NCBI GenBank assembly: GCA_051294905.1
Contig: CM119382.1
Span: 3,224,001 to 3,288,000, forward strand
From: Botryllus schlosseri
Lineage: Eukaryota
Direction of reading: 5' to 3'
Length of the DNA: 64,000 nt
Below the pieces are notes generated by a model. It was not told the DNA's origin. It worked only from the letters and a program-made list of their open reading frames with translations, and did not search any database. Position 1 is the first letter of the stretch; each line of letters begins with the position of its first letter. The translations under genes were made by a program, and so were the position numbers. Shown here in pieces: positions 8,793-60,729 of the stretch.

Positions 8793-8883
8793 TCATATTA
8801 AAATGAACCAGAACATTTTCGGCTGACACTCTTCAGAGGTAATCGTCAGCAACTATAATATAGAATTGGAAAGAACATTGTAC
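8793..8883 (-). repeat. Hammerhead-bearing repeat copy (core CTGAAGA, GAAA intact; helix I first pair mismatched)
   Basis: Reverse complement reads GCTGACGATTACCTCTGAAGAGTGTCAGCCGAAAATGTTCTGGTT. Confidence 0.8.
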
Positions 8884-9414
8884 GTCAACCATCGTGTCAA
8901 GTATTCGGGTTTATATCAATATGAGTATAATAATCTGTATATGTATTCTACATGTGGTCATCCAGTTTTCATCTCAGGGGACCAAACGACGATTCAGCCG
9001 ATGCAAAATAGCACCGATATTTCGGAACAAAATGTTGTGCCTCATAAATTATGTGATACGCCCTTTTACGTTATCAAGCTCACAGTTGTAAATGATCCAA
9101 AGGCTCTGCACTGCATAGTACGCGTAGAAGAGTCCTGCGGCGAGCAACCATTTCCTATTAGCTGATTTGTTTTACCTTTTTTGTTTTCGTTTTATTGGTT
9201 GCTTGGTTCCACTCATTGATTTATGATAACTATTGATCCAGAAGACATCACTAGATTTTTATATTGACTGGCGCATGCATGGATGCACCTCGTCTCGTCT
9301 CTCCTGTTATTCCCCGATGAACGAGTCTGTCCGAGTCTGTCTACCTACATCGTACCTGGCGGGACATTATATTTTACTTGTGTCGATTTGCGATCCACAG
9401 TATCGTGTAGATGG

Positions 9415-9827: not shown

Positions 9828-11268
9828 CTTTGGTGGATGTCGTCCACCGTAGCGTTATTGAATGGGTAATCTTTTTCATCTACAAATATACCAATCAAAT
9901 ATCCTAATCACAGAGCAGTAGCTTTTCCCTTCGCTACAGCTGAGAAAGGCTTTTTGAATAGAATGAACCTATAATGACACTGTGTTATAGTTTCAGATTT
10001 TCGTATTTTAGAACGCAGTCATATATCTGTCACGAAATCGGGTAATTTATAGAAAACGAACCCCGCGCAGTAAATAGATTGAGAGATCTGACGACTTTTG
10101 ACTCTGTTTTCGAAGTTACTATATGTCAAAAAATTATTATCATCGCTACCGGAGTGGTGTAGCTATTTTGTAATCCTTAAATATGAAAACACATGCCATC
10201 TGTCCCTAATCAGTAGAAGCAAGCTCGTTGAGAATTGGAAGATACAGCGCCGCGCGGATTGCGGTGTTGCTCGTAAATAGACATGCAACGGAAATATTCT
10301 TGTTAAATTATGAACGCGTGCGAATAAGTGTCAAAATATACCAGAAGATTTGCTTAATACCCCATGGGTGGTAACTTGACAACTTTACAACGTATGTTTT
10401 GAATAATTTGCGGCTATTTGGGTGATCGTTTACGAGCAAATTCTCCGGTCGGCTTAGACGATTTAGGCCCAAATGAAAAAGGATACGATGTTAACATAAA
10501 CAAAATAGTCAGATCTCAGTCATGTTCCGGTATCATGCCATATTGCAATCGAAGAATCAGCAACGCGGCATATAAATCCGGGTCGTTTCTTCTGTGAATG
10601 TAGGCTGTAGACTGTAGAGTTAGTTATAGAGTCTACTGTATAGAGCGCGGAGGTGTTTATGCGAACCAATTCAACATACCTAGATGTATTCCTGGATTCG
10701 AAAAAGGCTCCAATCATAATGACCCTAAATTTAGATGGGAACTGAGAATATTTCGCGCAGAACCCAAGACAAAGGTTTAAGGGAGGGGTGTCCAATCCCG
10801 TGGCACGTGAGTAGGTTGTGAGAGCCCCATGCGGTGATTTTCCAAATGCATAGACCCTTGGATGTACAGAATATCAGTATGAGATTGAATATTATATTCA
10901 TGTTGAGATAAAGCCGAATATCCTAAATGAGGTGTCACCAACGTACTTTATTGCGAAGTTACTATCCCTTATTATAGGCTTTCTCCGACTATTATTCTAT
11001 AGCGGCGTTGTTGAACCTGTGGGTCGCGACATCCCTGGTTGCTAGAAGGGGATAGTGGTATGAAAAACGTTGACAATTACTGCTCTATATAAATATTCTC
11101 TAGTGCATGGGATCGAGTTAATTTTATTGCACTACAATGCAAGATGTTATGCATCATATTTTTCACATCCCGGCCGCACGTGCTTCAAGAGTCAGTCAGT
11201 CAGTACTATTTATTCATTATTTCATTGAGGTACATCTGATATATCGAAGACTTTCGAAAAACGCATAT

Positions 11269-11500
11269 AAGAGCTTCTTGGAGGTACAGAACTTCAACAT
11301 ACAGTTGAATAGTATATTGATATTGAAATAAACCCTAATATTTTCGGCTGACACTAGTCAGGGGTAATCGTCAGCACTATAGTACAGAATTAAACTATGT
11401 TATTTTCAATTGTCTACTAGTTGCTGACAATTACTCCCGATGAGTGTCAGTGGAAAATATTCGGATTTATAACAATATGAATATACACTATTCGAAGCGC
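11269..11500. repeat. Inverted pair of hammerhead-bearing repeat copies
   Basis: A - copy (11269-11391) is followed directly by a + copy (~11405-11500); both cores are mutated. Confidence 0.8.
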
Positions 11501-11799
11501 ATGTAGCAGTGAAATATCTTCTGCACTCTGCAGTGATATAGAACAGAAAGACAAGCACAGCTAACAGAATAGTTCAATATCGATGGACTAGTTTTTTGTG
11601 GATGCCAACAATAAGTAGATTTGTTTGATATGTAAATAACCTGCATCAGAATGCAAGGAATACAAAATAAAGAGATAGTAGCCTACGTCAGTAGACATTC
11701 ACCAGCTTATAATAAATACCAAAATGACTTCAGTTAAGTTACCAATATTTTGTGCTACGATTGTTGATATACGATGTTCTTTTGAATTCTCTACTAGTT

Positions 11800-11844
11800 G
11801 CTGACGATTACCCCTGACGAGTGTCAAGCCGAAAATATTCGGGT
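11800..11844 (+). ncRNA. Putative minimal type I hammerhead ribozyme in dispersed repeat (intact core)
   Basis: ACCC-CTGACGA(11814-20)-G..C-GAAA(11831-34)-ATATTC|GGGT; predicted cleavage after C11840. Confidence 0.7.
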
Positions 11845-12059
11845 TCATTTCAATATGAATATACTATTCAATTGTATAATGAAGTTCTGTACCTCCAAGA
11901 AGCTGTTCAATAGCGAACAAGAGACAAAGAGACTCATATTTGACTACCATATTAGTCCAAGATTCACGCAACAATGTAACCACTTGCATCTGATATAAAA
12001 GAAAGAATATGATAGTAATAAGTTGATGTTCTGTATCAGTATAATTTCATCATTAAAAT

Positions 12060-12285: not shown

Positions 12286-13720
12286 TGGGCTTGTTGTAAT
12301 CTCTACTTCAAGTTTTTAAATCATGGAGCAAGCAAATATTTCGGTTGCTTCACAACTCGAAAAAGCTTGTGGCATGTAACTATAGTTATATATGCAACTT
12401 GTGTCCCATCGGGTAATCGCTAGCTATAGGTAGATGAATACATGAGGAGTTGAGAACAATATCTTCTCCAAGGGTTAGTCATCAAGCTTGTCAGCGTTGC
12501 AATGCTCAGGTAATCAAGCATAAAGATTCTCTCCTATTGTCGATTCTCCGTAAACAATATTCTTCTCTCGTCGGAATATGTAATTGTAGATTGTCGAGGT
12601 CGACGGTATAGTATGAATTGAGAGCAGGTGCCTGTGAAGCGGTTTCGTACGGAACATGTAATTATGCCGGAAATCTTAAAATATTAACTGTAAAACAGCG
12701 TTAAGACGCTGGCTGGTCACCGTGCGAACAGGTCTATTTATGATGACTCTTGGAGGTGCAGAGCTTCAACATACAATTGAATGATATTTTCGGCTGAAAA
12801 TGTCTGGGTTCATTTCAGTATGAATATATTATTCAAAGTCTATTCGTATTACGGAATTTAGTGTTGGGCAGAATCAGTTAAGCCGTCGTGATGACTAGCC
12901 GGAATTCTGTTTAGGACATGGCCAGGTTTCTAATCAGTGTCGGCAATCAGGCATGGTAGACATGGCAGTTTGGACTGCATTTTAGTGTGTTTTAGTTTAA
13001 TAATTCTCGAGAGTTGAAACTGAAGTATTAAATTTTTTCGAGCCGTCGTTTTATAACCCCCGGTCCTTGTATTCGGTAAGTTCGTTGTATACGAACTTGA
13101 CGCTGATTTTCAATGATAACTTCATAGTTTAAGACTAGACATTGTAACAAGTCATTAGGAGAAACACGCCATCTTCGATTGCTCGCATGATACGATAATA
13201 TTGGTTATCTGAGCATCGCCCGGAATCAAATTACATCTGGTACCGTTACGAAGTAGAGGCGAGATGTTTCACTACGTACTTTGTTGCTCGGTACGAATAT
13301 TTGGGCGATCGTTTCTTTGATCTCTGTGACTTCTTATCTAAATTGTAATCGAAATGTTAAGTGTGACCATTATGGCGGCTGGTTTCTCGTAATCACGGTG
13401 TACGATTCATTTGATCTAGTTAGAGTTATTCGCGATTGTTTGCGGGCGTAAAACGACTCTCGCTCCCGCAAATTGACCAGCGGGTTTCGAATACATTCGT
13501 ACGAACGACTTGTATATATAACGTCATCGGTAAACAGCGAAGGTGGCATTTCGTGAAGTGGTAGCAAAAAGAATGCTCACTACAGCGTACAAAATACGTA
13601 TTTTTAAATCCGTCCTAGTGCAGTGTAGTGGCTAATTGTAACATAGATCCGAATTAGAGATAAATTGTGAAGGTAGCGTATCTGTGTGTCAGCTTATAAC
13701 ATGGATATTGTGGCATACAG

Positions 13721-14794: not shown

Positions 14795-15050
14795 TGTGGC
14801 CTCTTGGAAATGCGTGAGATATTCTTGGGGGTGCATAACTGTCGTATACAATTGAATAATATTTTCAAACCAAAATGAGCCCGAACATTTTTGGCTGACA
14901 CTCGTCAGGGGTAATCGTCAGCAACTAGTACAGAATTGAAGAGAATATTGTCTACGATATACGATTGTTGGTATACAATTTTCTTTCCAATCCTATTAGT
15001 TACTGAAGAGTGTCAGCCGAAAGGTATATTTTGATATGAATATAATACTC
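14795..15050. repeat. Inverted pair of hammerhead-bearing repeat copies
   Basis: A - copy (14795-14960) followed by a partial + copy (~14970-15050). Confidence 0.75.
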
Positions 15051-18000
15051 AAAGTGGTCAGATTTTCGTTGCGATAAATCGACAACAGTTCCGGTTTATA
15101 ACATAAACTGCCTACGAAAAGACGCAACATTAAACGGCTGTCAATCGGTCGCTAGATATATTTTCGACTGCTGAATAGCGATAATCCTAAAGGCATCAAT
15201 AAATGTGTTTGTGGATTTCTAAAACCAGACTCGCAATTTACCGTTATGAGTCACCCGCTTAGAATAACGCGAGATATGTATTGGGCGTACTGGAAATGGG
15301 AAAATTCATCATCGTGACAAGCGGTAAGTCTGATAGGTTGGGTTTCGGGGTCCGTTATCGTTTTCTGCTAATTGGTTGTAAAGTCAAGCAATAATGGCAA
15401 GCTGCTTCGGGTTAATCCGATGTCGGTTTAGCGAAGTAATTTTCGCGATGACGCGACTGTGAGTTTTGCTAACGACACGCTCATAATTACCACCAAACTT
15501 GCTCTTATCTAGCCGCGGTTTGCAATTTGTGGCCGTGCACTCGCAGATACCGTATGTAACTTGATCTCAGGCGGCGCACGCGATGTACTCATTGATTTTA
15601 AGACACTTTAATGGAGGTACATGACTTCAGTACGCGATTGAACAGTATATTCATATTGAAATGAACCCGAATATTTTGGGCTGACACTCCTCAGGGTTAA
15701 TCGGCAGCAACTAGTAGAGAATTAGAAAGAACATTGTATCTCAGCAATATCTGTGTATATTGTATATCATTTTACATTGTATATCAACAATAATTTTGTT
15801 AATTTATACGCAACAAGCTTCCTGCATGTCATAATTAGGGACGGGCACAATGAATCATGTCTGGAATGTCTATTTAGTGTTAATTCGAATGGTGAGGGGT
15901 GATTTTTTCGTTCCTTGCCACTATGAAAGGCTGTAAACCTCGCCGTATCGCAGCGTACGAAACGTGGTGTACGAAGTCACGCGCGTTGGTGGAAATGACA
16001 TATATGTGAGGCCGTGATCGACCGACATCATTTTTACAAAGAGAAATGAATTGTATAGGTGTGGCCTAAAATATAAAATAATCTTTATGTGATGTAATAT
16101 ACCGGAATAATTTTACATGTACTCATATCAAAGGTAGCCTGCATATTTGAATTCTCCCATAATTCACACCGGGTTATTCGAACACTCAACACGAAGTCTA
16201 ATTCTCGATTCAGAATCGAATCACTCAAGCCTACTCGGTTTTGCCCCGGCTTAGTCATGCCTCATGCGGTATGGGAAGGGTATTGAGAGGTGCTAACAAA
16301 ATGGCATATCTCGCTTGTCCAGTACAAGAGCACGCGTGTTCATATATCTCGTGTAAATCAATAAGAGTAGCTTTCGAAATCATTTATTTCGGACGCGAAT
16401 ATTCCGTGTAGAAAGTAAGGATGGTGCGAATTCGCTGACATGTTCTAGTACGTTTAAATGCGTTCGATTGTGAACAGAAATTGCAACTACAAAGACTATT
16501 TACATTCTAGAGTGCATCCCTGTCTCTAAAAGATATTGTCGGATTGTTGGGTAGTACTATTATACGCAATACGCTTGGTGTCATTGGAAATATATCACTC
16601 ATGACTACGTGGCTGGAGCTAAATGTCCTATCATGAACTTATTATGTCGGATCCGTTCGCAAAGACCCTTTATTCAATTGTTGAGCTGCTCAAATAATCC
16701 TTTTCGTATAGAATCAACCTGGTTCCGTGAGACCTAAATATCAATTTTAGTTTTGTCAGCAATAATTAGCCTGCTAACGCACCGGAATAAAATCTCTTGG
16801 TCTTATTCTAGCCACTTTTCAGGCGAAACACGTATAGAGCTCACAAGGGCGTGTCATCATATTATTCACAAACGTAATAGTGTGTCATTAATAGTCAAGC
16901 AATGTTATCGAGAATCAATCAACTTTTCGGTTACATTTGGTTTATTTTAGTTTTGTGTTCATGTTCTATTGGTGCAGTTATAATTCATGAAGCTTCGATC
17001 ATATGTGCTAAGATTGCTGTAAATTCTGCTATTTCTCAAAAATGTTCACGGTGTAGAACCATCCGAAATCAGTCTGAGAGCATGAACGTCTGAAATATCA
17101 AGGTCCGCACGAGAAACACTGAAATCAACAAAACGTTCGCGTTATCCCAATAGAAAGAATTCTATGCTACAGCAGTGCGATGATTTGTTATCTTAATTAA
17201 AGCTAGCAGCGTTCCTCATTTATTCGGACAATAAATTACCGTTGTCATTTGTATAGTGCGTTTCGGTATCCACACCGGAATCGTTAGAATTGGAAATTGG
17301 TTTTCGTCCGCACCAGGTAAGCTATGATTAACAACGGTAATACATGCATTGGGATTAGACTTTCACGTATACTGAATCTCCCATACCGCAGGCATTCTCT
17401 CGTAGATGTCTTGTCTGCCCATCGTCGGTATTTCAATCTAATTAGAATTCTCAAACATCAGAAGGTAATCACTGATTCTCTGCGCGTTAAAAAGCAGACC
17501 ACTTATCCTGCTCTGCGAAACCGCGTTCTAATGACTCTTTTGCATCAATTCCCGCAAATCAATACCGGGAATTATCGGGGTTAGCGATTTTACATCATTG
17601 CGAATGTGACGGATGGCAGAACGCGATCCTCAGTTTGATTGGCGTGTTCACTGGAACCCTGATTAATTCTCATGCACGCGTCCGTGGTATTGGTATATAT
17701 AACATATGGAATAATCCGGATTATCGCAATTCGACCGTATACCTCATGTCGCGCAATATACAAATTAAGTTGTATCTTACTGGTGAGAGCTTGAAGCTAA
17801 AATACGCATCTCCTTGTTTGACGAGCTCCACATCGTACCATCAGTAAGACTTGGACTACTAGATAATTCTAGTTGTTGAATTAAACAAAAAATTAGAGCC
17901 AAATATCGGTAATCTGATTTATAATTCTAATATAATATGTGAAATGTTTCTATAATGCAATTTTTTGCTCTAATCTAATTGCTGGTTTTCCTGCTATGCT

Positions 18001-21000
18001 ACATGAGAACTGTACAGTGCGAAACGGGCCAAGATTGGTGTACAGACATTTGCCATGCTCGTGCTTATGATGATGAACTTTGATTTGATAAGGACTGAAC
18101 TTGAATTATGTTGTATTTCATTTTAATCCTTGATTCAATTTGCAAATTCAGTAATTCCAATTCTAAGATGATTTTTAAAGCTGAAAATTTTCCTACAGTT
18201 GTCCAACCCTACCCTCAGTCACGCAAATAGTTTAGGAATACTTAGAAAACCTACACGGCCCTGAGTCACCCTTCATGGATGTCGCCTGTCATCCGCGCTT
18301 ACCGTCGAGATACGATTTTCAAAATACAATGTTCTTTCCAATTCTCCACTAGTTGCAGACGATTGCCCCTGACCAGTGTCAGCTGAAAATATTCGGTTAT
18401 TTCAAAGCGAATATACTATTCAATTATTATTGAAGTTCTGCACGTCCATGAAGCTCTTCGCATCCTAATTCCGACGCCGCCAACATTAATAAAGTAGATG
18501 AGATTGCAGACTTGTAAGTTCGGCAATCCGAGGGAGTATACTAATCTCCATCCATAACTCCAATGTTCCTGATCTTTCTTTGATAATCTGCAGATATTCT
18601 GCCAACTTTGAAGCTGTCTGCAAGGGCATGTCATTATTCTTAATCACGGTTTATCTCAAATCTTGTTGCACGGATAGGGGGATGAATGATACCGGGCGAT
18701 GGGAATCGGTAATTTCGGGCGGAAAGAAAATTAGATTAGGAAATGCTTGATTTGCAGACCATTGCTCATCATCGCTCTTTCGTATGTGACTTCTATGCTA
18801 AGATACCGGAATCGCTGATAAGCCCTTTTGCGTCACGGGCGCGTTGCGTGTAGCACGTGGGTGGATTCGCTGATGCGTTATGTGTAAAATGTATGTACCA
18901 CTACCAGTACTGGTTTACAGAATGGAATTCTCAGCCGTGTAGTAAAATGCTGCCTACAAGCTACAGATATATCACAAAACGAAAATCGAGTGTTTCGCCG
19001 ATTTTAATAATAGAGTATAATGCAAATCAGGTACACAGAACTTTGCGGTACAATATTGTGCTTCTACGCCCATTCCAGTGGGTGAAAATGGTTCGAATGC
19101 ACCAATTCTAATGGACATATATCGTTTGGGTGGAGCGGATTATGTTTTCGTGTGTCCGTGGCCCGATTCGCGCCATTTTCTATGGTGTGGAAATTGGGTA
19201 AATATACCTATTTTTCGTCCGTGCATGGATTGTCTGTACATCAGCGTTGTTCAAAAATAACTTTTATCTTCAAATGTTACTGGCTAATCGATAAAATTAA
19301 CTGAAAAAACGCTGCATACCGGTACCGACTTTGGCTCAATTCCAACCCGTGGAAGCGAAAATACTGGAATACCAAAATTTTAAATTTACTTTTAGTAGTG
19401 TTAAAGTAGTAGTTTTATAATTAATAATGCACCACCGGCCACCATAAATATAATTTTTTTCAAATCCAAAATTTTGTGTGCCTATGCCAACTGCCAATAA
19501 CTTCGCTTCTACCGATTGGAATTGGGCGGAATTTGCTATGCATCGATTTTTAGGCAACTTGACAGTACAATCTGACAGAAAATTATATGTTTTCAATACA
19601 TTCGGTGTGAACCGTTATTTTAGACAACCAAACAATTTTATCAAATCGCCACTGGCCAGGGAAATTTGAAGTAAAAGGTTAATTTGAAGCAGCCCTAATA
19701 TTTTACATGTAGGAAACTCAAGTTTTATAGCGTATGGTAGTTCAGTAATACTGAAGCATACTCTACAAAGTATACTACGGTCGTGGGCTAGTTCGCCTTC
19801 AGAATTCGACACCGCGTACTCCACTCCTATCTCACTGATGAGCAGAACCAGTATCTAAAACGCGTTGGAGGGCTTCGCAGAGTCTAGAATTACTTCGATA
19901 TCTTCTCGCGGCAATGCGCGAAAATGTCCGGGGTATTCAATCTTGTAAAATCCTAATTTGTCAACCACAAGGTCGGCCTTATCCGTACTAGCGGTGGTAG
20001 AAGACAACGATATCGCACTGCGCAGTATTACCGCTGTACTTTTTGCTTCAATAAACATACCAGATAAAACCTGTCTTCACACACGATTATGGTCAGTAAT
20101 CTTGAAATATCTGTAGTACATGAGTGAGGTCGCCGACTTATCTCCAAATGCGGTTTGGGAGGTCAGACAAAAGCGATGTCAAGTCATACTTCAACTGTTC
20201 TACCATGAAGGTGGGGCTCATTAGGGGTCCAATGCATCATTACCCAGACGGTGGTGGGTTTAACTGGGATGTTTCGAGGAATGATATCTCCCTTAGCGAG
20301 TGAGGGGCCATCCGCGCGGAACGCGTTAGTGATCATTTTCAAAGTCAGCACTGAAATACAACACGTGAAGATGATATCACAAGTTACCACGAACTTGAAG
20401 CATACGATGAGTCAGGTCTGTAAGAGGCAGCGTGCGTTTGGGTTGATTATTCCGATATAATTCTTACTTGAAGATGAAATCAACCATGCGGGGATATGTG
20501 TCTCGTAAAAGAGCATTGAAATTATCTGAAACACATCTCATTTTTATATTAAAGAGCTTCATGGAGGGTCAAAACTTCAATATACAATATAATAATATAT
20601 TGATATAGGAATATACCTAAATATTTTTGACTGGCACTCCGCAATCCGCATGGGTAATCGTAGGCAACTAGTGGAGTATTGGAAAGAAAATTGTACATCA
20701 ACCATCGTATCACTCGAAAATATTGGGGTTTGTTTCAATGTGAATATAATATTTAATATTGATATTCATCAGCATCCACTATCATGCCATGAAGACTGCG
20801 TGAGAAAATAGCATCATTTCGCAATCGATAATTTTATCAGCGAAAAACTGCATTCCGACATATTTTCAACGTACTTTTCTTCTCATATTACGGAAATGCG
20901 ATGATATTTGCAATACGCGCAGTCTCGAACTGATAGCTGATATCCAGAAGAATATTATATAGGCATGGACGGAGAATAGACTAGACATGTATTGCCCTAA

Positions 21001-27510: not shown

Positions 27511-29052
27511 ACTAAAGTTAAATAATATATTTACATTGAAATATATCTAAACATTTGTATTGCATATTGAAGTTCCTCTAAGTGTCTCTTCAATGTCATA
27601 TTGTGAATACTAAATACCGATCAAAAGTGTCAATTTAGACTTAGTTGTCTATCTTTTGCCACTATAGGCTATTGAGTTGAAAAATATACACTGAGAATTT
27701 GCAGGTATAAGTTCGTTTTGATAATATTGACAAGGTGTATTCGTCCTTATTGGAGATGAAAAACATTTTCGGAATGATGGCCACTAGACACCAACCACGT
27801 GGCTGAGGTATTATCCACTTAGTATTGGAATCAGGCACCGAGAATTAACTACATTACCTGACGTAATCGATTTTGAACAATGACTCAATAATGTATAGTA
27901 GCTAGAAATATTCTCCTGGGAATAGTGAGGATGACACTTTATGCACCATAGCCTGCGCCATACTGAGCCCCGTCTATTCCAAAATGCGAACTTAGAAATC
28001 ACGCGTCAATACTAAGACATTACGAAGATATTGTTCAATTGTATATTTAAGCTCTGTAACTCAAAGAAGCTCTTCATTTTTAAGATGATGAAGTATTTTC
28101 ACCTTGTCGAGATCCGCATTGAAATACACCCTGAGACATGATCACACTGCACACATTCAATCATTCAACCAAACCTGATAATAGATCATAATTAATATAT
28201 ATGCAGTACACACATAGCCTGCACCTTCCAACGCAATGACTCGCATATATCGCCGATAAGTTAGAGGCCTATATGTATGATGATAGTAGTAAAACTTGGT
28301 GCTGTCAATGGTGAACGTCTGTCGGTATTTGTCGGTCAGCCCCTTCATTATAGTTGGTCATGCGCATGTGCTTAACCTTCTAAACATGGACCAACTCTTA
28401 CTTACAGCAACGCGATTGCAGTTTGCGGCATTGGAATTGGTTCGTTCAACTTCGCCATTCTAATTACGAGTCCTACTAATCTGATTAAGTCAACTGGATA
28501 ATGTCTGTCGCGATGTCCGGCGTGTTTACACTGGAATTATCCAGGTTTCTTTCGAGACAAACTTGTATTCTTGAGGCGCCATCGCGGCTGAACCGGCATT
28601 ATTTCTCAATACCTCGCAGTAACTTGATTTAAAGCTAATGTAAACAATTTAGCTGTTCTTCATTAGCGGTGGATATATAGCAAACAATTGTATACGAGAC
28701 AGAGATGCGGCCGGGTCGTCTAAGTAGGAAAATCTTGATATTCTTGACCGAAATACGGGAGTAGATGTATGTCTCTACCAGATGGGAAGGTTCTAGATCT
28801 AGTTGAATGCCACAACTTCCGCAATACTCAGAAGTCCCGGAGAACCGGTACCAGACAGCTATAGGCAGGGGCAGTGCGTTTGCAACCATTAACGCATTTT
28901 ATGCAAGACTTAGCCAGGATTTACCTTAATTTAAGTTATCGTAGACCCCGAATATAGTGTCAAAGATACACTAGACTGCCCTAATGATTGCACTACTGCA
29001 TTCTGCACATTACGCAAGTTGATAATGAGGAATACTCATTTCTGTGTAGAGT

Positions 29053-29297: not shown

Positions 29298-29719
29298 TGA
29301 GTTGATTTGCTAGTATTTCATCCCCAGGCCTAGACTCATGGCATGAAAGATAAAGAATTATGACGTCAATAACTCACGGGCGGATATTAGGACTTGTCTC
29401 TTGGTCCCAGCAACTCTACATTGAACGACCCTTGTCGATGTGGTTCGTTGACACTCAACTTTCTCAGCCGGCACTCCTCCAGTGAACGCGCATGACGATA
29501 TTATGTCGTAACGCGTGAGTTTTACCCCGGGTAGGTTCGACTTCAAGTTTTCAGTAATATGATTCACGGCTCATGGTGTAGAATAATTTTCAAAGTTCTC
29601 CTTGAAGAGCATTTTGGGGTTACAGAACTTCAATATATAATTGAATGGTATATTCATATTGAAATAAACGCGAATATTTTAAGTGGATATCTAATGTTAT
29701 TTACTATTCTCTACTAGTT

Positions 29720-29763
29720 GCTGACGATTACCCCTGACGAGTGTCAGCCGAAAATATTCGGAT
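29720..29763 (+). ncRNA. Putative minimal hammerhead ribozyme (intact core, one helix I mismatch)
   Basis: GCTGAC-GATT-ACCC-CTGACGA-G-TGTCAGC-C-GAAA-ATATTC|GGAT. Confidence 0.62.
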
Positions 29764-30199
29764 TTATTTCAGTATTAACATACCATTCAATTGTATATTG
29801 AAGTTCTCCCTGATAATCATAATCATAAACATTGTGAATCGATTATATTTACGATATATGTTGCTGTTATATTTTTATAGCATTTTCTATGACGATCGTT
29901 AATTGTAGAGCAAGTGATTACACTTGACATTTACTCAAAACTCAAACGACTTCAGTCACTTTCACGCGCAGAATCGGACGGGATCGAGCTATTATTGCAC
30001 GTAAATTGGTTTCAGAGTTTCCGGATTACAGCCGCGACCTGAGGTGATAGAAGCGTTTTGCTCAATCTCTCGTAATCGTCCATTTTTTCTTCGGGAAATA
30101 CAGATCGATTCTGTGGCCGCCAATGCAGAAAATTTCCGACGCTTGCTTGGTCGAATGCAGTAGAATTGATCGGGCTTCAAATGACTTTTCATGATTGAA

Positions 30200-49100: not shown

Positions 49101-52100
49101 TGGCATTAGTGTTATGCTAAACATGACAAAACACAGTTTGGAACGTGAGCGAATCGGCATACGCACTATTTTATGTTAATACCATATAGAATACTGAATA
49201 ACTGAACTACTTCACACGAAAACTCGTACAAAATCATCCTAATGAAACGTTTCATTTTTCCCACCTACACTTCAGGTTTCGCGACCTATCAATGCGTGCG
49301 TCAGCCCTCCATGAGAGAAGCGGCCTGGTTCGTTACAGGCCCAGACGTAACGGAATGTATCACGTGGGCGACTGGAATACGCCATAAATATCGAACAAGT
49401 GAGTTCATTTATGGAATTGGCTACAACACATTATTAATCTAATGATGTCAGTTACCCATTTTAATATATATATTATGATGCATCATATTATATATGTTAG
49501 TATGTATACAATTGATTAATATATTCATATTGAAATAAACTCGAATATTTTCGCCTGGAGTTTTCATCGTATATGGTACTAGGGAATTGGAAAAAAACAT
49601 TGGTTATCAAAGAATAATGGCCATTGTATCAAAATATATATTGTTAACGTCACCATGTAAATTATCTTACGCAAGGTTTACGACAGGTTTTTGAATTACC
49701 CTGTCTTTACAGGCGAGCTGGACAGGGCTACTGCTATCGACGAGCTCCTGACTGGCCTAAAACAGTACGGGGTTAATGATAAATCCCTTCAGTTTTCAAC
49801 CGATCTCATATCAGAGCTACTTGAAGACAAAACCACACCAAGCAAAGCGGCTACTAAAGAAATGTTACTGGTAAGTAATTCCAATTCAATCTTGAAGTTT
49901 TGGGCTGAGATTTGTAGGGCGATTCTCATCCAGGTTTTATCTCCATTGTTTTATTTACATGGTGTAAGTTGCATTGAAGATTTTCTGCCAAATTTTAATG
50001 TCATTGTTATTGGATTTGGTTACATTATGTGCGTAGGGAAATGCCTAGTCTCGCTCTAACTAGTCTGTTTCGATACTAGCTATGTTTATTTCACGCCTGG
50101 AATTATAAACGCCGTCATATGTATTGGGAAAATCGAATTCTCCACACTGCTTTATAAGTAGGACATCATGATGTTCGCACGCTGATAGCACGGTCTGCCA
50201 AATTTAATCCAATCATTTTCGCACTTTATTCTTGACAATAACAACATTCTTCAGAGGTCACATCCTAGTATGTTCAAGGTGTCAATTTATGACGCAAAAT
50301 ATTGGATGCGAGCGTCAACATTTCAACTTCGAATGTCATCGCTGTACAGAGCGTTTTGTGACATAAAACAAATAAACACGCTCGAGAGAAAATCAAAGCC
50401 GTGCTGAAATTGAAACGCTTTTGAATTCGAATAAAAACCTTTATTTCACGACGCTACCTGACATTGGAATTCTCAGAATCAAACAATGATATCTGAGATG
50501 GCATAACCGAACGCAAGTAAACATTTGACTTGCTTGCAGTGAAATGAAGGAGATTTTTAGTGTCCCCGTAGTGAGATCAACAATAACCATCCAACGGGCC
50601 ACTTGCCTTCATACCGACTTAGACAAATTGATAATTCTTGTTGTGCAATTACACTAATTAAAGCGAAATACTGGTAATCTAATTCCTATCTAATTCATGA
50701 AATGTTTCTTTGCTCTAATTCTAATCTAATTTGTGATGTTTCGAGTCGTAGTTTAAATTCTAATCTAATATCTGATTTTCCTGAAAATGCTACAAAAGAA
50801 CTGTATAGTGAAAACGCTATGTAGTTGTAATTCTAATTCGAATCTAATTTCAAAAATGCTGTAGATATAATTTTAATTCTATTGTAATTTGGGAAAAATG
50901 TGTCGCTATAATTTTTATTCTAATCCATTCTGGAAAATGCTGTAGCTATAATTCCAATTCTAGCCTAATTTGGAAAAACTGTGTAGCTATAATTCTAATC
51001 TAATTTGGAAAGGCTGAAAATTTTCTAGCTTTACAACTCTGACTTAATGTTTGTGCCGAGAACATAGTATCTCGATTGGCCTAGTCATAGTTCCCCATCG
51101 TGATATTGTACAACAGTGAGGATTGCGTTACATTTTCGAATGTTCAAATGCAACTGCAATGTACGCTGTATCGCGCCTCAGCCCTGAAATTGTAAATTTC
51201 GAATGGGGTAGTATTTTGCAGTTGCCCGTTTTGAGGTATGTCGGAATTATCTCGAATTTTGGTGAGGCATGAAACAAATAAAAAAATTTCAACTTTTCCA
51301 AATTAGATGAGAATTAGAATTATAGCTACACAGTTTATTCTTTCAGATTAGCCTATAATTAAAATCAAAACTACGCAATATTTACTTCCAAATTAGATTA
51401 GAATTAGAATTAGAATTAGAACAAAGACACAATTCACTTATTATATCAGAATTGGATTACCGGCGTTTCGCCCTAATTAGTTTAATTATGCAACTAGGAT
51501 TATCTAGGTATCCAAGTCTGGCATGTGATTCCACTTTTACGTTGATAAATTAATAACATTTGGTATGCTGTTGCCTACAGTCAAGGAAGCCGCCATTTGG
51601 GAGTCTTTATTGCGAGTCTCCCGATTCCTGTGAACCGTACCAAAGCGTATCTGAAGTCGTGCCGTTGAAATACAGGCATGCGTTTTATCGGAATCGAATT
51701 TCGATGTTGTGATGAACTCTAGCTGTGATGAAAAGCTGGATATCATACGCGATTGAACTTTTGGCACGCTCCGGCGAAATCGATGTGCTTTTGCCGGCGC
51801 ACTTTTTACTGTTGATGCTTTTACCGTGACCTGCCTTTTTCCTTTCATTTTATCACGGTTTCGACGGTATAGTGATGTAGGTTAAACAGCAGACATGTCA
51901 AGGTCAACTGAATTATTTTTACAAATGTCCAGTCAGGGCTTTAGTCATGACTCGACTCGAGTCTGCCTCGAGTCTCATTTTTTATTGACTCGACTTTACT
52001 TGAGTCATTTTTTTAATAATGGAAGTTATATGACTCGACAAATCATATATGACTTATTCAAGCCTTGTATATCAGGACCAGAAACTGTCTTTTATCTATT

Positions 52101-58100: not shown

Positions 58101-59157
58101 CCATGCCAAAACTAACGGATATATTTCATTTTCAGAAGTCAATCGCAACCCGCCGTGCCCTCACAGATCGACGCAACACTCCGCCCCAGCTCCCCCTGAG
58201 CCACGCCAGCGCCAAGAAGACGACGTTTTCCTCCCACCACCCGATATCGAAAAAGACAACAGATCTGAAAGCACGCGACTACTACACAACCCACCTGGAG
58301 ACATCGAATACGACCGTTTACAATACTACCGGTGTCCCGATCATTACAACCAAGGACCTTACACGCCGCAAGGCAATTATCACCCTTCCCCGGCCCAACA
58401 TAGACTCATACAGCCCCCTTCATCGATATCCCCACCGCATCAACTAATACACCCTAATTACGGTGTTCAATATCACCCCAGAAGTCCAGACATGCGATTC
58501 GAACCGGGTCATCCGCATAGTAACAGGCAAGACGCGACACATCCTTATTACTGGGAGCTAGACCCACCTTTAGCGCAGCATCACCACGTACATCAAAGTA
58601 GCATTGAGGAGAATACGAGCAGTGGAAAAAGAGATTCGGGAATTAGCATGCAACATCTTCCACCTAATTCAATGATTCATAGATTCGCAAACGAGATGCA
58701 AAGGAGCGGCATGCCTAGATCGCGTGACAGCCCCATTTCACCAACTGGCTCGCATTCGTCAAGTCGACAGACTCCTCCAGTTAGAATACAAGAGGAGGCT
58801 TTGCATCACAGTCAGTTACACCACCATCAACCACGGTATCCTGTCCATCACACGAGAGGAACGTTATCTGAAGACGAAGGACAAGGGTCTTCGTTTGAAG
58901 ACAGGGAGAACTCAAAGAACTTGTCGAACTCTAAGTCTGAAAAGGCCACAGCGCGTGGCACCACGCACACGCCGCGTGGGGTGTCGCCTCCTATCAAACT
59001 AGAGAAACCAATACCGATGGTGCCGGATCAGAGGGCGGCCGGTTCGATGCAGTCAGATTCGGATGACCCGATTGTGACTGACTGTAGCGGTAGTAGTGCC
59101 GCGTCGTCTTTCGGGAGACACTACAGGTCATGGGCTAATCAAGAGAATATGGTGTGA
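31103..59157 (+). CDS. ADGRL: Latrophilin / adhesion GPCR class L (ADGRL1-3-like), 22 coding exons, ~1557 aa
   Basis: Manual exon assembly: 31103-31172, 37615-37733, 38219-38334, 41918-42027, 43164-43426, 45353-45562, 46403-46721, 47878-48114, 49276-49398, 49713-49870, 52251-52419, 52511-52702, 53346-53515, 53643-53689, 54134-54358, 55235-55491, 55670-55892, 55957-56125, 56188-56340, 56730-56826, 57210-57434, 58136-59157. All introns are GT-AG with matching phases; total 4674 nt ending in TGA. Domain order lectin-OLF-HormR-GAIN/GPS-7TM is diagnostic of latrophilins. A 1:1 vertebrate paralog cannot be assigned. Confidence 0.95.
33093..33205. mobile_element. GGAGTC/GACTCC-rich MITE fragment (CAGTGATGAGC end)
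   Basis: The same terminus appears inverted at 35432-35442 (GCTCATCACTG) with similar CCGACTCC repeats at ~35320-35442. Confidence 0.6.
33230..33920 (-). pseudogene. Decayed hAT transposase (Ac/Hermes-hobo-like) in ADGRL intron 1
   Basis: BED finger KSDVWKDF...ARCQNC...L.H...[12 protein letters not shown] (33705-33920). After stops and frameshifts: [11 protein letters not shown]...ITTDMWTD...SLTVHF with the first catalytic Asp. Interrupted by a CAGTGATGAGC element at ~33093-33205. Confidence 0.85.
37615..37733 (+). CDS. ADGRL: ADGRL exon 2 (start of SUEL/RBL lectin domain)
   Basis: TTTGCAG| ... |GTAAGA; encodes ...[21 protein letters not shown], similar to latrophilin ACEGYPIELRCPGSDVI. Confidence 0.93.
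38219..38334 (+). CDS. ADGRL: ADGRL exon 3 (lectin domain)
   Basis: TTTTCAG| [14 protein letters not shown]...[15 protein letters not shown] |GTAGGC; ANYGR lectin motif. Confidence 0.95.
38472..38515 (+). ncRNA. Putative minimal hammerhead ribozyme, sense strand in ADGRL intron 3
   Basis: ACCC-CTGACGA(38486-92)-G-TGTCATC-C-GAAA(38502-05)-ATATTC|GGGT; predicted cleavage after C38511. Confidence 0.7.
41918..42027 (+). CDS. ADGRL: ADGRL exon 4 (end of lectin domain)
   Basis: [33 protein letters not shown] carries the DPCxGTxKYL motif; donor |GTGAGT. Confidence 0.95.
43164..43426 (+). CDS. ADGRL: ADGRL exon 5 (olfactomedin domain start)
   Basis: FQCPG...ASWTKDPLQ...[11 protein letters not shown]...YSLPSR...[13 protein letters not shown] resembles vertebrate FLCPG...WCKDPLQ...GFVVYDG. 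Confidence 0.95.
45353..45562 (+). CDS. ADGRL: ADGRL exon 6 (olfactomedin)
   Basis: [15 protein letters not shown] olfactomedin motif; TTGCAG| and |GTGCGT. Confidence 0.95.
46403..46721 (+). CDS. ADGRL: ADGRL exon 7 (olfactomedin end)
   Basis: [10 protein letters not shown]...[14 protein letters not shown] olfactomedin motifs. Confidence 0.95.
47878..48114 (+). CDS. ADGRL: ADGRL exon 8 (Thr-rich linker and HormR start)
   Basis: [14 protein letters not shown] linker, then [24 protein letters not shown]. Confidence 0.92.
49276..49398 (+). CDS. ADGRL: ADGRL exon 9 (HormR end)
   Basis: GFATYQC...[12 protein letters not shown], matching the W..GPD.S.C pattern; donor |GTGAGT. Confidence 0.92.
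49713..49870 (+). CDS. ADGRL: ADGRL exon 10 (GAIN subdomain A)
   Basis: Open helical-type frame with TTTACAG| and |GTAAGT; phase compatible. Confidence 0.88.
52251..52419 (+). CDS. ADGRL: ADGRL exon 11 (GAIN)
   Basis: ALSNVDD...SWDDL...[14 protein letters not shown], typical of a GAIN helix. Confidence 0.9.
52511..52702 (+). CDS. ADGRL: ADGRL exon 12 (GAIN)
   Basis: TTACAG| ... |GTAAAG, phase 1-1, open frame [17 protein letters not shown]...FP...IQIS. Confidence 0.88.
53346..53515 (+). CDS. ADGRL: ADGRL exon 13 (GAIN B)
   Basis: [13 protein letters not shown]...DSKVISAT...PATITLQH, matching VVF.LY..LG..L / NS.VISA / ITL.H motifs. Confidence 0.94.
53643..53689 (+). CDS. ADGRL: ADGRL exon 14 (GPS start, CVFW)
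   Basis: 47-bp exon [15 protein letters not shown]; TTTTTACAG| acceptor. Confidence 0.92.
54134..54358 (+). CDS. ADGRL: ADGRL exon 15 (GPS motif, Stachel, TM1)
   Basis: GEWSDSGC...[17 protein letters not shown], then hydrophobic TM1 [17 protein letters not shown]. Confidence 0.96.
55235..55491 (+). CDS. ADGRL: ADGRL exon 16 (TM2-TM3)
   Basis: RNIVH...[11 protein letters not shown]...[22 protein letters not shown]. Confidence 0.96.
55670..55892 (+). CDS. ADGRL: ADGRL exon 17 (TM4-TM5)
   Basis: [10 protein letters not shown]...[10 protein letters not shown]...IWTLVGPI...NLVFL. Confidence 0.96.
55957..56125 (+). CDS. ADGRL: ADGRL exon 18 (TM6-TM7)
   Basis: [16 protein letters not shown]...[22 protein letters not shown]; preceded by a 64-bp intron. 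Confidence 0.96.
56188..56340 (+). CDS. ADGRL: ADGRL exon 19 (helix 8 / proximal tail)
   Basis: [11 protein letters not shown] resembles latrophilin KKVRKEYGKCL; preceded by a 62-bp intron. The donor (AAT|GTAATA) is less certain. Confidence 0.85.
56730..56826 (+). CDS. ADGRL: ADGRL exon 20 (tail)
   Basis: [10 protein letters not shown] matches the conserved latrophilin SRIRRMWNDT; donor |GTGAGC. Confidence 0.88.
57210..57434 (+). CDS. ADGRL: ADGRL putative exon 21 (phase 1-1, 75 codons, possibly a cassette exon)
   Basis: CCAG| ... GGAG|GTAAAG, 225 nt open in the required phase. No recognised homology. Confidence 0.6.
58136..59157 (+). CDS. ADGRL: ADGRL terminal coding exon (His/Pro/Ser-rich tail, ends ...WANQENMV*)
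   Basis: CTAAC branch-like site plus TTTCATTTTCAG| acceptor in phase with the long ORF 58078-59157. Confidence 0.85.
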
Positions 59158-60729
59158 TTATGGTACTGAAGCGAGAAAAGATATCGCATAGCAGAGGGCG
59201 GTGTTACCGTGTTAAACATGGGACTGTCCTGATGGATCGTACCAGACAATACAATACACTTCACACCGTGGAATATAAAGAATGGAAAATAAGATACAGA
59301 AATAAATTACTGTGCCATCCCATCGAAAGAGTAGCATTTAATAATCGGCAAAATCAACTACCTGGGGTACTCGTCAGTCAAGTATTCGAATATCATCGAT
59401 TATACCGCACAATTACTTCAAAACCTCGAACACGTATCTTTTTTGCGTCCACAAGGAAAATGTCGCCACACTTCATCAAAGATAATCACCCCATTTCGGG
59501 CCGTGATTATTTCACGCTCTGCGACCATTGCGAGGCCTGATCGCTCCATGTCAACAATGTCGTTCCTGGTAAACTTGCGCAACGTGTTTTTCGATGCTGA
59601 AATACGACTAACCTAGGTTTCGAGACTCCAGCATTGGAAACGAAGTAATAAAACTGCATTTTTCGTGGATAAAATATTACTCTTGGTGTTAAGACGTTTA
59701 ATATTGTCGCAATCGATACTAGATTCGTTTTGCCCAACCGTAATCGGGAAAGCTGTAATTCACACGTGTTTTCCTGGCGATTCATAGCAACCTAGCAATT
59801 CTGACTCAACTCTCTTTTTTAACCGTTTTACTTTGCTTCTCTTTTCGCATTTTGATACAAGCGCATGTTCCTTTATATTACCGCAACTTTTAATTAGCTG
59901 CGTTGGTGTATTCAATGATGGCATCACGGAGTTAATATTGTAAGGCTCTGTTGCGTAATGCTTCCATTTACACGTGATGATCAGTTCTTCCCTTATATGT
60001 TGTATTGAAATTACGTCTAAAATAACTTCCTGTATGTTCTGTTCATGGATTTAGTTTCCGCGTTCGTCTCGATGTCGGCATTTAAGCCAAAGACTTATTC
60101 TGCAAAATTTGTTCGCTTGAGAAGTTGAAGACGAAAATCATGACGTATCTACATATTTGCGACGCATTTCTACTCATTTTTACTGTAATGAGATTCGTGA
60201 AATCGGGATGAAGTTATTTTCGGTGTTTTTAGGCAAATGCTCGTACGAAATTTGTTTGTGCCTAACTTTAACATCATATCATCACTGTGACCTATATGCC
60301 CATGATGTTGTGTTTTATCGCTTTGAAAAATATGACTTTACTTGCAATCGTACGTTGTCTGTCCGATGGGAAGTGTACTAGGGTACATAGACGAGACGAA
60401 TGCTAAAGAAATGACAGATTTCAGGTTAGAAGTTATTTGAATAGCTTGTGATTTGATTTGGAAAAAGTCGTACCAAAGGGGCTCTTGGAGGTACAGAACT
60501 TTTGTATACATTAAATAATATTTTCCGCTGGCACTCGCCAGGAATATTCGTCAGCCCAATATATTAAGCTTTATTTCAATATTCGATACTGAACCCTTTA
60601 CAAAGGATTCAAGGCCACGGGCACCAAATCTAACCTAGCCGCAGATAAGTAAGTGTTGCCTTCAGTTCCAATGAGCTTAGTTCCGCGATAGCAGGCGAAC
60701 TGATAGCCATTAAATCCATCGGATCGGAT

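What the first reader, a model, noticed from the sequence alone, without database searches (positions are those of the whole stretch)
8793..60585. High-copy short interspersed element built around a minimal, probably dimerising, hammerhead ribozyme
Seen in sequence: about 25-30 copies or fragments of a ~130-170 bp repeat with consensus ...CTACTAGTT GCTGAC GATT ACCC CTGACGA G TGTCAGC C GAAA ATATTC GGGT T(T/C)ATTTCAATATGAATATA...TTGAAGTTCTGTACCTCCAAGAAGCT. It contains every hammerhead core element in type I order: CUGANGA, a G-C closing pair for helix II, GAAA, U-H triplet (UUC) and a 4-bp helix I (ACCC/GGGU). Helix III is only 2 bp, and its strands plus loop form the palindrome AAUAUU (wobble-palindrome AAUGUU in the 8793 and 14880 copies). 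Established: minimal type I hammerheads with a reduced helix II and palindromic helix III occur in Penelope-like retroelements and cleave as dimers, as the newt satellite 2 ribozyme does. The right end (CCTCCAAGAAGCT) is sharp and the left ends are ragged, as expected for reverse transcription from a fixed 3' end. Inference: this is a non-autonomous PLE-derived, retrozyme-like family, at about one copy per 2-2.5 kb here, and possibly undescribed.
Basis: partly seen in the sequence, partly recalled or inferred. Interest (0 to 1): 0.88.

Follow-up and report, generated by a model that had tools for sequence, protein, structure and literature searches.

The report
Penelope retroelement tails with pseudoknotted hammerhead
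The repeat is the truncated 3' end of a very abundant Penelope-like retrotransposon, and its hammerhead ribozyme motif is real, but its second helix forms by pairing with an upstream strand (a pseudoknot) instead of a hairpin, a layout shared by one whole clade of these elements.

Summary
About 24 insertions (29 arms or fragments) of the repeat lie between 8790 and 60583, where none is expected by chance.

They are not a SINE, a MITE or a retrozyme. They are 5'-truncated 3' ends of an autonomous Penelope-like element (PLE) with a 2683-bp tandem unit and an 845-aa RT plus GIY-YIG ORF. They show the usual PLE signatures: an inverted second arm, a tail of about 31-34 nt on one side, and 10-15 bp target duplications.

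The hammerhead-like motif sits in the inter-ORF pseudo-LTR, 14 nt upstream of the ATG. The genome holds 2,539 exact 44-nt copies.

The upstream box GCUGAC pairs with GUCAGC and stacks on G10.1-C11.1, giving a 7-bp pseudoknotted helix II. In 12 homologous elements from this genome and other assemblies, all six box pairs covary and every cell is paired. Helix I, the helix III palindrome and the C3-G8/U3-A8 core pair covary too.

On an RT tree the pseudoknot type marks one clade (support 100/97). More distant relatives carry the published hairpin-type minimal hammerhead.

Cleavage is untested and the RNA reads were uninformative. Earlier notes of this scan proposed the same pseudoknot on other DNA of this genome.

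The parts
29720..29763 (+). Best-preserved hammerhead in the window (1 mismatch, in helix I 3' strand). Box (helix II 5' strand, 10.2-10.7) 29720-29725; linker GAUU 29726-29729; helix I 5' strand ACCC 29730-29733; core CUGACGA 29734-29740; G10.1 29741; 1-nt linker U 29742; helix II 3' strand GUCAGC 29743-29748; C11.1 29749; G12 A13 A14 29750-29752; helix III palindrome AAUAUU 29753-29758; C17 29759, with the predicted cut after it; helix I 3' strand 29760-29763 (GGAU here, GGGU in intact copies).
   Evidence: anatomy by homology
29603..29807 (.). Head-to-head insertion: inverted arm 29603-29680 (-) and arm 29695-29807 (+).
8790..8895 (-). Single 5'-truncated arm; core at 8817-8836 (CUGAAGA); helix III AAUGUU.
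10865..10929 (-). Terminal fragment of an arm, without the ribozyme core.
11269..11484 (.). Head-to-head insertion: arm 11269-11391 (-) with motif 11332-11375 (2 mismatches), and a decayed arm 11398-11484 (+).
11745..11909 (+). Youngest copy in the window (95.8% to the genomic unit). It is a single arm that reaches the exact 3' end. The motif is broken by a 1-nt insertion in the helix II 3' strand (GUCAAGC).
12748..12836 (.). Pair of terminal arm fragments (12748-12782 -, 12790-12836 +) with the core deleted.
14822..15052 (.). Head-to-head insertion: arm 14822-14945 (-) with motif 14879-14922 (3 mismatches, G12 changed to A, helix III AAUGUU), and arm 14960-15052 (+).
15614..15748 (-). Single arm; core 15675-15694 (2 mismatches).
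18311..18459 (+). Single arm reaching the 3' end; core 18369-18388 (2 mismatches).
20552..20757 (.). Old head-to-head insertion (74-78% identity) with an internal deletion in the right arm.
24163..24193 (-). 31-nt terminal fragment.
28021..28076 (+). 56-nt terminal fragment ending at the exact 3' end.
30194..30352 (.). Head-to-head insertion; core on the - strand at 30232-30251 (3 mismatches).
30509..30690 (.). Head-to-head insertion; core on the - strand at 30548-30567 (2 mismatches).
32185..32368 (.). Head-to-head insertion; core on the + strand at 32307-32326 (3 mismatches).
35763..35876 (+). Arm with an internal deletion; core 35818-35837 (3 mismatches).
36403..36539 (-). Single decayed arm (78% identity).
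37424..37534 (+). Decayed arm with a deletion inside the motif.
37781..37953 (.). Head-to-head insertion; core on the - strand at 37817-37836 (2 mismatches).
38051..38166 (+). Single arm; core 38106-38125 (3 mismatches). It has a box A-to-G change together with a d-strand U-to-C change. Genome-wide counts show this pairing is no commoner than chance.
38462..38539 (+). Short arm; motif 38472-38515 (1 mismatch, in the helix II 3' strand).
46186..46330 (+). Old decayed arm (74% identity).
49505..49557 (-). Terminal fragment.
60517..60583 (.). Decayed fragment; core-like 60522-60541 (-) with 3 mismatches.

Best explanation
The repeat is the 3' end of an autonomous, recently active Penelope-like retrotransposon (PLE). 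That end comprises the roughly 148-nt spacer between tandem ORFs (the pseudo-LTR) plus the first ~55 nt of the ORF. Copies arise by target-primed reverse transcription that starts inside the ORF start region and usually aborts early, giving 5'-truncated arms. Priming from both cut DNA ends often adds an inverted second arm that lacks a ~31-34 nt tail, and the whole insertion is flanked by 10-15 bp target duplications. The spacer carries the element's hammerhead ribozyme, 14 nt upstream of the ATG. It is a type I, dimer-type hammerhead. Helix I is 4 bp (ACCC/GGGU) and the core is CUGACGA...GAAA. Helix III is only a 6-nt palindrome (AAUAUU) that can pair only between two copies, and the predicted cut is after C17. 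Helix II is not a hairpin. G10.1-C11.1 stacks on a 6-bp helix between the strand just 5' of C11.1 (GUCAGC) and a box (GCUGAC) lying 4 nt upstream of helix I. A single nucleotide links G10.1 to the far end of that helix, as in loop 1 of an H-type pseudoknot. The 4-nt box-to-helix-I linker ties the distal ends of helices I and II together. Shown here: the anatomy, the insertion signatures, and covariation of every helix across homologous elements. Inferred: that the RNA actually cleaves, probably weakly and as a dimer on tandem or paired transcripts; I put that at about 0.6. The 3D feasibility of the 1-nt crossing is also inferred.
For: Element: Young copies run from the arm upstream into an ORF end with a GIY-YIG/CCHH motif. 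C6:6605000-6621000 holds tandem plus head-to-head units of 2683 bp with 857-codon open frames. The arm overlaps the ATG. The 845-aa product has RVT_1 and 962 PLE-type homologues. Target duplications and tail-less inverted arms are seen in L004, L010, L011, L014, L017, L019 and L022. These features match published PLE structure (PMC8557442) and internal RT initiation (PMC11167929). The genome holds at least 8814 EN-domain candidates and 2,539 exact 44-nt motifs, against 0 in the control.

Ribozyme: The ~65-nt motif region is invariant between ORF subfamilies about 12% apart in protein, while the spacer next to it varies. Homologous elements from other assemblies carry the same layout at the same place with different helix sequences. 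Their box/partner pairs are UCUGAC/GUCAGA, UCUAGC/GCUAGA, UCAAGG/CCUUGA, UCCCAU/AUGGGA, UGACGC/GCGUCA, CUCAGU/ACUGAG and UCCUAU/AUAGGA. On alignment A1, the box helix has 6 of 6 pairs changed on both sides and 100% of cells paired. The whole structure is 93% paired against 60% in shuffles (0 of 500 reach it) and 25-40% when partners are slid. The 10.1-11.1 pair also covaries. C3-G8 is replaced by U3-A8 in several homologues, a known hammerhead core covariation (PMC4209133). Helix III is always a palindrome (AAUAUU, AAGCUU, AACGUU, AGGCCU, AAUAUAUU, AAAAUUUU) and position 17 is never G. A strict descriptor finds the layout in 18 of 92 homologue loci and 0 times in reversed controls. On an RT tree all 13 pseudoknot-type rows fall on one side of a branch with support 100/97.
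Against: No cleavage data exist. Raw single-cell RNA reads show no pile-up of ends at the predicted cut. That library cannot show such ends well, and 69% of the reads come from copies embedded in other transcripts. The monomer's minimum-energy fold is a different structure (core hairpin plus CCGAA/UUCGG, -10.5 kcal/mol). Published PLE hammerheads cleave poorly in vitro, and in the one PLE tested in vitro ribozyme mutants did not affect insertion (PMC4209133, PMC11167929). Every dispersed copy spans the cut site, so its template RNA was uncleaved or religated there. Three homologues depart from the rule: L071 does not fit, L067 has A13 changed to C, and L070 has an extra U after G12. The boxes were picked by best complementarity, but perfect 6-bp matches at a fixed distance in all 12 sequences are far beyond chance, at roughly 0.07 per sequence.
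Confidence: 0.85

Rival explanations
1. This is the reader's model: a minimal type I hammerhead whose helix II is a single G-C pair closing a 7-nt loop, with the upstream GCUGAC playing no part.
For: All core nucleotides are in type I order. Engineered hammerheads without stem II (minizymes) are known from the older literature (my own knowledge).
Against: The upstream box covaries perfectly with the supposed loop in 12 homologous elements. This model is unstable (+0.4 kcal/mol). Published PLE hammerheads have long helix II (PMC4209133).
Confidence: 0.04
2. The conserved pseudoknotted segment is not a ribozyme. It would instead be a binding or start signal for the element's reverse transcriptase, or part of the internal promoter or 5' UTR, and the hammerhead core letters would be kept for that reason.
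For: The invariant block (~65 nt) is larger than the ribozyme and includes CUCUACUAGUU upstream of the box. In the anole PLE the RT needs RNA around the ORF start, and ribozyme mutants still insert (PMC11167929). No cleavage ends were seen in the reads.
Against: The pattern is exactly what a hammerhead requires. C3-G8 and U3-A8 covary, G12 A13 A14 and A15.1-U16.1 are kept, position 17 is never G, and all three helices covary while their sequences are free. Distant relatives carry a textbook hairpin-type hammerhead at the same place.
Confidence: 0.08
3. The copies are a dedicated non-autonomous family (SINE-like or retrozyme-like) that uses PLE enzymes in trans and may make circular RNA.
For: All window copies are short, with 5' ends 118-163 nt from the 3' end and none reaching the ORF. 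A 2026 preprint argues that animal retrozymes derive from PLE pLTRs (10.64898/2026.07.22.740005).
Against: Young copies genome-wide have 5' ends spread continuously from ~140 nt into the ORF and are 96-98% identical to the autonomous element over the shared part. No head-to-tail short arrays occur in the window. No circular junction reads appear at the cut site.
Confidence: 0.08
4. The element is a foldback or MITE-type DNA transposon with long terminal inverted repeats.
For: Many copies are near-perfect inverted pairs.
Against: The arms are the 3' end of a retroelement. The inner junctions vary and the two arms are unequal, with one lacking the tail. Target duplications vary from 10 to 15 bp. 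About half of the young copies have one arm only.
Confidence: 0.01

Closest known systems
Minimal hammerheads of Penelope-like elements (Cervera and de la Pena 2014, PMC4209133; Lunse et al. 2017, not readable here)
   Same: Location in the pLTR next to the ORF start; type I order; short helix I (4-6 bp); G10.1-C11.1; helix II about 7 bp in total; helix III reduced to a palindrome that implies dimers; U3-A8 core variants; thousands of dispersed truncated copies, some as inverted pairs.
   Different: Helix II is not a hairpin. Its 5' strand lies upstream of helix I, making a pseudoknot. The usual unpaired base between A9 and G10.1 is mostly absent. Hairpin-based descriptors and Rfam models miss it. 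More distant relatives in my sample have the published form.
Poseidon PAc of the green anole (Frangieh et al. 2024, PMC11167929)
   Same: RT plus C-terminal GIY-YIG ORF in tandem units; hammerhead at the ORF start; reverse transcription starting inside the ORF start region; an optional 30-40 nt tail; both DNA strands used for priming.
   Different: Here the insertion end lies about 55 nt into the ORF, against 111-118 nt in PAc. The cut site is upstream of the ATG, not downstream. The helix II topology differs.
Non-circularly permuted hammerheads, types SGC, CSG and GCS (PMC10085705)
   Same: Natural hammerheads whose core helices form pseudoknots. A short linker joins one side of stem I directly to one side of stem II.
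   Different: Those variants reorder three intact blocks. Here the block order is the ordinary type I (C-G-S), but the CUGAnGA block itself is split. It keeps only G10.1, and the rest of its stem II strand has moved 5' of stem I. That paper assumed this interruption does not occur.
Newt satellite 2 and other dimer-type hammerheads (Forster et al. 1988, as cited in PMC4209133)
   Same: An unstable helix III with a palindromic loop, so that two copies must pair to form the active site.
   Different: Those have a hairpin helix II and sit in short tandem satellites, not in a coding retroelement.
Metazoan non-LTR retrozymes (PMC7229834)
   Same: Type I hammerheads and a probable PLE ancestry.
   Different: Retrozymes are short head-to-tail repeats that give circular RNAs and have no ORF. 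The copies here are dispersed, 5'-truncated or head-to-head, and continuous with an ORF-bearing element.

Membership tests
Hammerhead ribozyme | Core C3 U4 G5 A6 N7 G8 A9, with a C3-G8 tertiary pair | tested here: met
   CUGACGA in this genome. Homologues have CUGANGA or UUGANAA, that is C3-G8 or U3-A8. L068 has U3 with G8.
Hammerhead ribozyme | G12 A13 A14, an A15.1-U16.1 pair, and H (not G) at the cleavage site | tested here: met
   GAA followed by a palindrome starting with A and ending with U, then C, U or A, in 12 of 12 sequences. Exceptions in single copies: L067 has A13 changed to C, and L070 has an extra U after G12.
Hammerhead ribozyme | Helix I flanking the core and the cleavage site | tested here: met
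   Helix I is 4-6 bp. All four counted pairs change on both sides. 81% of cells are paired despite some MAFFT misalignment.
Hammerhead ribozyme | Helix II as a hairpin between A9 and G12 (the three-way junction of types I-III) | tested here: not met
   Only 9 nt lie between A9 and G12. Six of them pair with an upstream box (6 of 6 pairs covary, 100% paired). A helix II exists, but as a pseudoknot.
Hammerhead ribozyme | Match to the Rfam hammerhead covariance models | tested here: not met
   No hit at gathering score or at E<=10, even on a 101-nt stretch.
Hammerhead ribozyme | Site-specific self-cleavage | tested here: inconclusive
   No pile-up of read ends at the predicted site in one single-cell RNA run. 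The library is unsuited to this, so a bench assay is needed.
Penelope-like element (canonical, C-terminal endonuclease) | A single ORF with RT followed by a GIY-YIG endonuclease carrying a CCHH motif | tested here: met
   RVT_1 at E 1e-7. GIY-YIG is weak at E 7e-4, below the Pfam cut-off. The motif VYEFKCHCDCGYVGRT...H...H is visible. The 962 homologues carry the same Pfam set.
Penelope-like element (canonical, C-terminal endonuclease) | Tandem or partial-tandem units forming pLTRs, an inverted 5'-truncated copy, and a 30-40 nt tail at one end | tested here: met
   2683-bp tandem plus head-to-head units. Inverted arms cover positions 1-112/115 of 146, so they lack about 31-34 nt. Compare PMC8557442.
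Penelope-like element (canonical, C-terminal endonuclease) | Hammerhead motif in the pLTR | tested here: met
   The motif lies in the 148-nt inter-ORF spacer, 14 nt before the ATG.
Non-LTR retrozyme | Short head-to-tail tandem repeats, each with a hammerhead, without an ORF, giving circular RNA | tested here: not met
   Window copies are dispersed or head-to-head. Young copies continue into the ORF. No circular junction appears at the cut site (weak test).
MITE / foldback DNA transposon | Terminal inverted repeats with fixed-length target duplications and no retroelement ancestry | tested here: not met
   Target duplications are variable at 10-15 bp, the arms are unequal, single-arm copies exist, and the arms equal the PLE 3' end.

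The most novel reading that the evidence does not exclude
This would be a further natural hammerhead topology, outside the six block permutations listed in 2023. The 5' strand of helix II has moved upstream of helix I, so helix II is an H-type pseudoknot closed by G10.1-C11.1. A short linker then tethers helices I and II in place of the usual loop-loop contact. The layout is fixed in one whole clade of Penelope-like elements found in this genome (2,539 intact copies) and in many marine metagenome contigs. Hairpin-based searches cannot see it. The same blind spot could explain PLE lineages reported as lacking canonical hammerheads or as having only a hammerhead 'core' (PMC8557442).
Probability: 0.5. 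Interest if true: 0.75.

Novelty: new variant of a known kind. Interest (0 to 1): 0.62.

Why it matters
Hammerheads in Penelope-like elements are known, so the repeat family as such is ordinary.

The new point is structural. A whole retroelement clade keeps a hammerhead whose helix II is a pseudoknot, supported by covariation in every helix. This bears on several questions:
- It extends the known ways the hammerhead fold can be wired.
- It breaks an assumption used to enumerate hammerhead permutations (PMC10085705).
- It shows that descriptor and Rfam searches under-count ribozymes in retroelements.
- It offers a natural test of whether tethering helices I and II can replace the loop-loop contact.

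It also gives thousands of dated, neutral copies next to active masters for studying ribozyme decay.

Tried and rejected
1. Rfam at gathering score and at E<=10, on the whole window and on 101 nt, gave no hammerhead. The two weak hits (snoCD11 at E 2.2 and STnc320 at E 9.5) are taken as chance.

2. Covariation among decayed copies inside this genome. Of 50 copies with the U-to-C change in the helix II 3' strand, 43 are uncompensated, 3 are compensated in the box, 3 in the core, and 1 in both. Dead copies decay neutrally and say nothing. The 'compensated' window copies at 38051 and 60517 are chance.

3. A conserved switch between the box helix and a competing hairpin of the core (CUGAC-GAGU-GUCAG). 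That hairpin exists here and in the UCUGAC-box relatives. It is absent in most homologues, so it is incidental.

4. RNA evidence. One read-laying run on four runs showed coverage on both strands, mostly from embedded copies, with no ends at the cut site and no circular joint there. This counts neither for nor against.

6. A Pfam GIY-YIG search of the genome found only one unrelated locus, so other PLE families could not be reached that way.

7. The MITE/foldback reading was my first impression. I dropped it after seeing the young copies.

8. L071 (45% identity, inside the clade) could not be fitted to either hammerhead layout.

9. Lunse et al. 2017 could not be read, so prior description there cannot be excluded.

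Full report
**Observation**

The 20-nt core has 15 matches with up to 3 mismatches in the window, against 0 expected. blastn with one copy, nhmmer with a 100-nt query and blastn with the full genomic unit all recover the same set. That set is 29 arms or fragments in about 24 insertions between 8790 and 60583.

Many copies are head-to-head inverted pairs (the left arm is the reverse complement of the right arm). And GCTGAC just upstream is complementary to GTCAGC inside the supposed helix II loop.

**What the repeat is**

The window lies in a 495.5-Mb, 219-contig genome, so this is a eukaryote. The arm has at least 2853 candidate matches there, the best at 96-98% identity.

In those young copies the arm is the end of something longer. 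Upstream the sequence continues into the end of an ORF with a GIY-YIG/CCHH endonuclease motif, and the 5' ends differ from copy to copy. At C6:6605000-6621000 the element stands in tandem and head-to-head units of 2683 bp with 857-codon open frames. The previous ORF stops 55 nt before the arm, and the next ATG lies inside the arm. So the arm is the 148-nt inter-ORF spacer (pseudo-LTR) plus the first ~55 nt of the ORF.

The 845-aa product has an RVT_1 domain and 962 homologues sharing one Pfam set. At least 8814 endonuclease-domain candidates exist, many with intact 857- or 860-codon frames, in subfamilies of 98%, 88% and 87% protein identity.

About half of the young copies carry an inverted second arm that stops at position 112-115 of 146. 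It therefore lacks the last ~31-34 nt. The whole insertion is flanked by 10-15 bp duplications, seen in L004, L010, L011, L014, L017, L019 and L022.

Tandem units, an inverted 5'-truncated copy, a 30-40 nt tail at one end and heavy 5' truncation are the published hallmarks of Penelope-like elements (PMC8557442). The end of the insertion inside the ORF start fits the internal initiation of reverse transcription, and the extension of both cut strands, shown for the anole element (PMC11167929).

All window copies are short, with 5' ends 118-163 nt from the 3' end. Genome-wide, young copies show a continuous spread of 5' ends up into the ORF. I therefore read them as dead-on-arrival truncated copies of the autonomous element. 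They are not a separate SINE or a retrozyme, and they are not a MITE.

**The ribozyme**

Rfam finds no hammerhead at any threshold. The monomer's minimum-energy fold is something else.

Even so, the motif lies where PLEs are known to carry hammerheads. The ~65 nt around it are invariant between subfamilies whose proteins differ by about 12%, while the neighbouring spacer has substitutions and indels. Published PLE minimal hammerheads have a large hairpin helix II of 6-8 bp, an unpaired base after A9, G10.1-C11.1 and a palindromic helix III (PMC4209133).

Earlier notes of this scan on other windows of this genome (s1-231978, s1-229058) proposed that the upstream box forms helix II. I tested that proposal.

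Decayed copies within the genome carry no signal. Of 50 copies with one changed base in the 3' strand, 3 are compensated in the box, 3 in the core, 1 in both, and 43 not at all.

The test came from other organisms. I fetched the contigs that encode homologues of 39-64% protein identity. I also fetched 80 more loci from metagenomes. Just upstream of their ATG, or after their stop codon, the close homologues show the same layout with different letters:
- a box of 5-6 nt;
- a 2-7 nt linker;
- the helix I 5' strand;
- the core CUGANGA or UUGANAA;
- one base that pairs with the base before GAAA;
- one linker base;
- the reverse complement of the box;
- C, then GAA;
- a 6-8 nt palindrome;
- a non-G base at the cleavage site;
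- the helix I 3' strand.

On the 12-sequence alignment A1, all six box pairs have changes on both sides and 100% of cells are paired. The whole structure is 93.1% paired. That compares with 60.5% in shuffles (0 of 500 reach it) and 25-40% when partners are slid. The 10.1-11.1 pair is G-C ten times and A-U once. The twelfth row, L064, is counted as U-G only because MAFFT misaligned it; parsed by hand it is U-A. Helix I covaries at all four pairs.

C3-G8 is replaced by U3-A8 in several homologues, the core covariation already described for PLE hammerheads (PMC4209133). Helix III is AAUAUU, AAGCUU, AACGUU, AGGCCU, AAUAUAUU or AAAAUUUU, and always self-complementary.

A strict descriptor finds this layout in 18 of 92 loci, and none in 378 kb of reversed sequence. 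A hairpin-type descriptor finds the published minimal hammerhead in 30 other loci, again with none in the control. All pseudoknot-type elements are at least 39% identical to this PLE. All hairpin-type ones are at most 38% identical. On a maximum-likelihood tree of the RT core, the 13 pseudoknot-type rows lie on one side of a branch with support 100/97, which needs one change on the tree; 0 of 500 label shuffles do as well. The tree is rooted at its midpoint for drawing only, so the direction of change is inferred and not shown.

**How it probably works**

G10.1-C11.1 closes the junction, and the box helix stacks on it to give a 7-bp helix II. That is the length seen in hairpin-type PLE hammerheads.

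The single base after G10.1 must reach the far end of the 6-bp helix across its deep groove. That is the classical geometry of loop 1 in H-type pseudoknots. This is established knowledge applied by inference; no 3D model was made.

The short linker from the box to helix I joins the distal ends of helices II and I, and may stand in for the loop-loop contact of canonical type I hammerheads. A similar direct link was noted in the permuted type-SGC ribozymes (PMC10085705). That paper assumed the CUGAnGA block cannot be interrupted, so this arrangement is not among its six permutations.

Helix III can form only between two copies. Activity should therefore need tandem transcripts or two RNAs.

The box helix alone is more stable (-7.4 kcal/mol) than the competing core hairpin (-5.4). 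An alternative inactive fold reaches -10.5.

A cut after C17 would leave an RNA starting 14 nt before the ATG. In one homologue (L066) the start codon spans the cut site. Every dispersed copy spans the site, so its template was uncleaved or religated. This agrees with the finding that unprocessed RNA is the main insertion substrate in vitro (PMC11167929).

**What is not shown**

Cleavage is not shown. The one RNA run with raw reads is single-cell and 90-nt. It showed both strands covered, 69% of reads running on into other sequence, and no ends or circular joints at the site. The same absence was reported for the anole element (PMC11167929).

Three homologue copies deviate. L071 fits neither layout, L067 has A13 changed to C, and L070 has an extra U after G12.

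I could not read Lunse et al. 2017. Full-text searches found no description of a pseudoknotted helix II in PLE hammerheads, but prior description cannot be excluded.

**Verdict**

It is wrong on helix II and on the non-autonomous, retrozyme-like nature of the copies. The element family is of a known kind. The ribozyme is a new variant of a known kind, well supported structurally and untested biochemically. The scan had already noted this pseudoknot on other DNA of the same genome. The cross-species covariation and the clade test are new here.

Noticed in passing
L066:1160-1205 (and 3887-3932): In this homologous element the ORF start codon spans the predicted hammerhead cut (A17, U1.1, G1.2). 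Cleavage would therefore destroy the start codon. In other homologues the ATG lies 5-15 nt downstream of the cut.
   Followed up: partly
L071:2960-3040: This PLE lies inside the pseudoknot clade (45% identity, intact 872-aa ORF). Its pLTR has UUGAGAA...GAAA plus the palindrome AACUAGUU, but no recognisable helix I and only a 4-bp box helix. It may be a further variant or a decayed copy.
   Followed up: partly
The look-up of sequencing runs, run X16 ('organism B'): A run labelled as a different organism holds 76% of the sampled words of the pLTR/ORF-start stretch. A near-identical element therefore exists in a second species label. This could be a close relative, a mislabel or horizontal transfer.
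   Followed up: no
L024:1000-1420: A tandem array of a ~37-bp unit (TTGTAGTTCTAGTTGCTGATTTTGAAAATTCAGTAG-like) lies directly next to a young PLE tail insertion. A similar unit is seen in L006.
   Followed up: no
L009:2950-3010 and L012:1410-1450: A GC-rich palindromic repeat (GGCCCGCGGGCCGC...-type) recurs near unrelated PLE insertions. It probably belongs to another repeat family.
   Followed up: no
L009:2140-2400: A decayed relic of a different, older PLE family lies on the same locus as a young insertion. Its endonuclease region is ~35% identical to the main family.
   Followed up: partly
L002:1000-1400: A young PLE tail sits in an intron-like gap next to open exons of a host membrane-protein gene. 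The exons include a conserved stretch reading ...[32 protein letters not shown]....
   Followed up: no
window 34249-34321 (+): A weak match to the C/D-box snoRNA model snoCD11 (24.8 bits against a gathering score of 60, E 2.2). It is probably chance.
   Followed up: no
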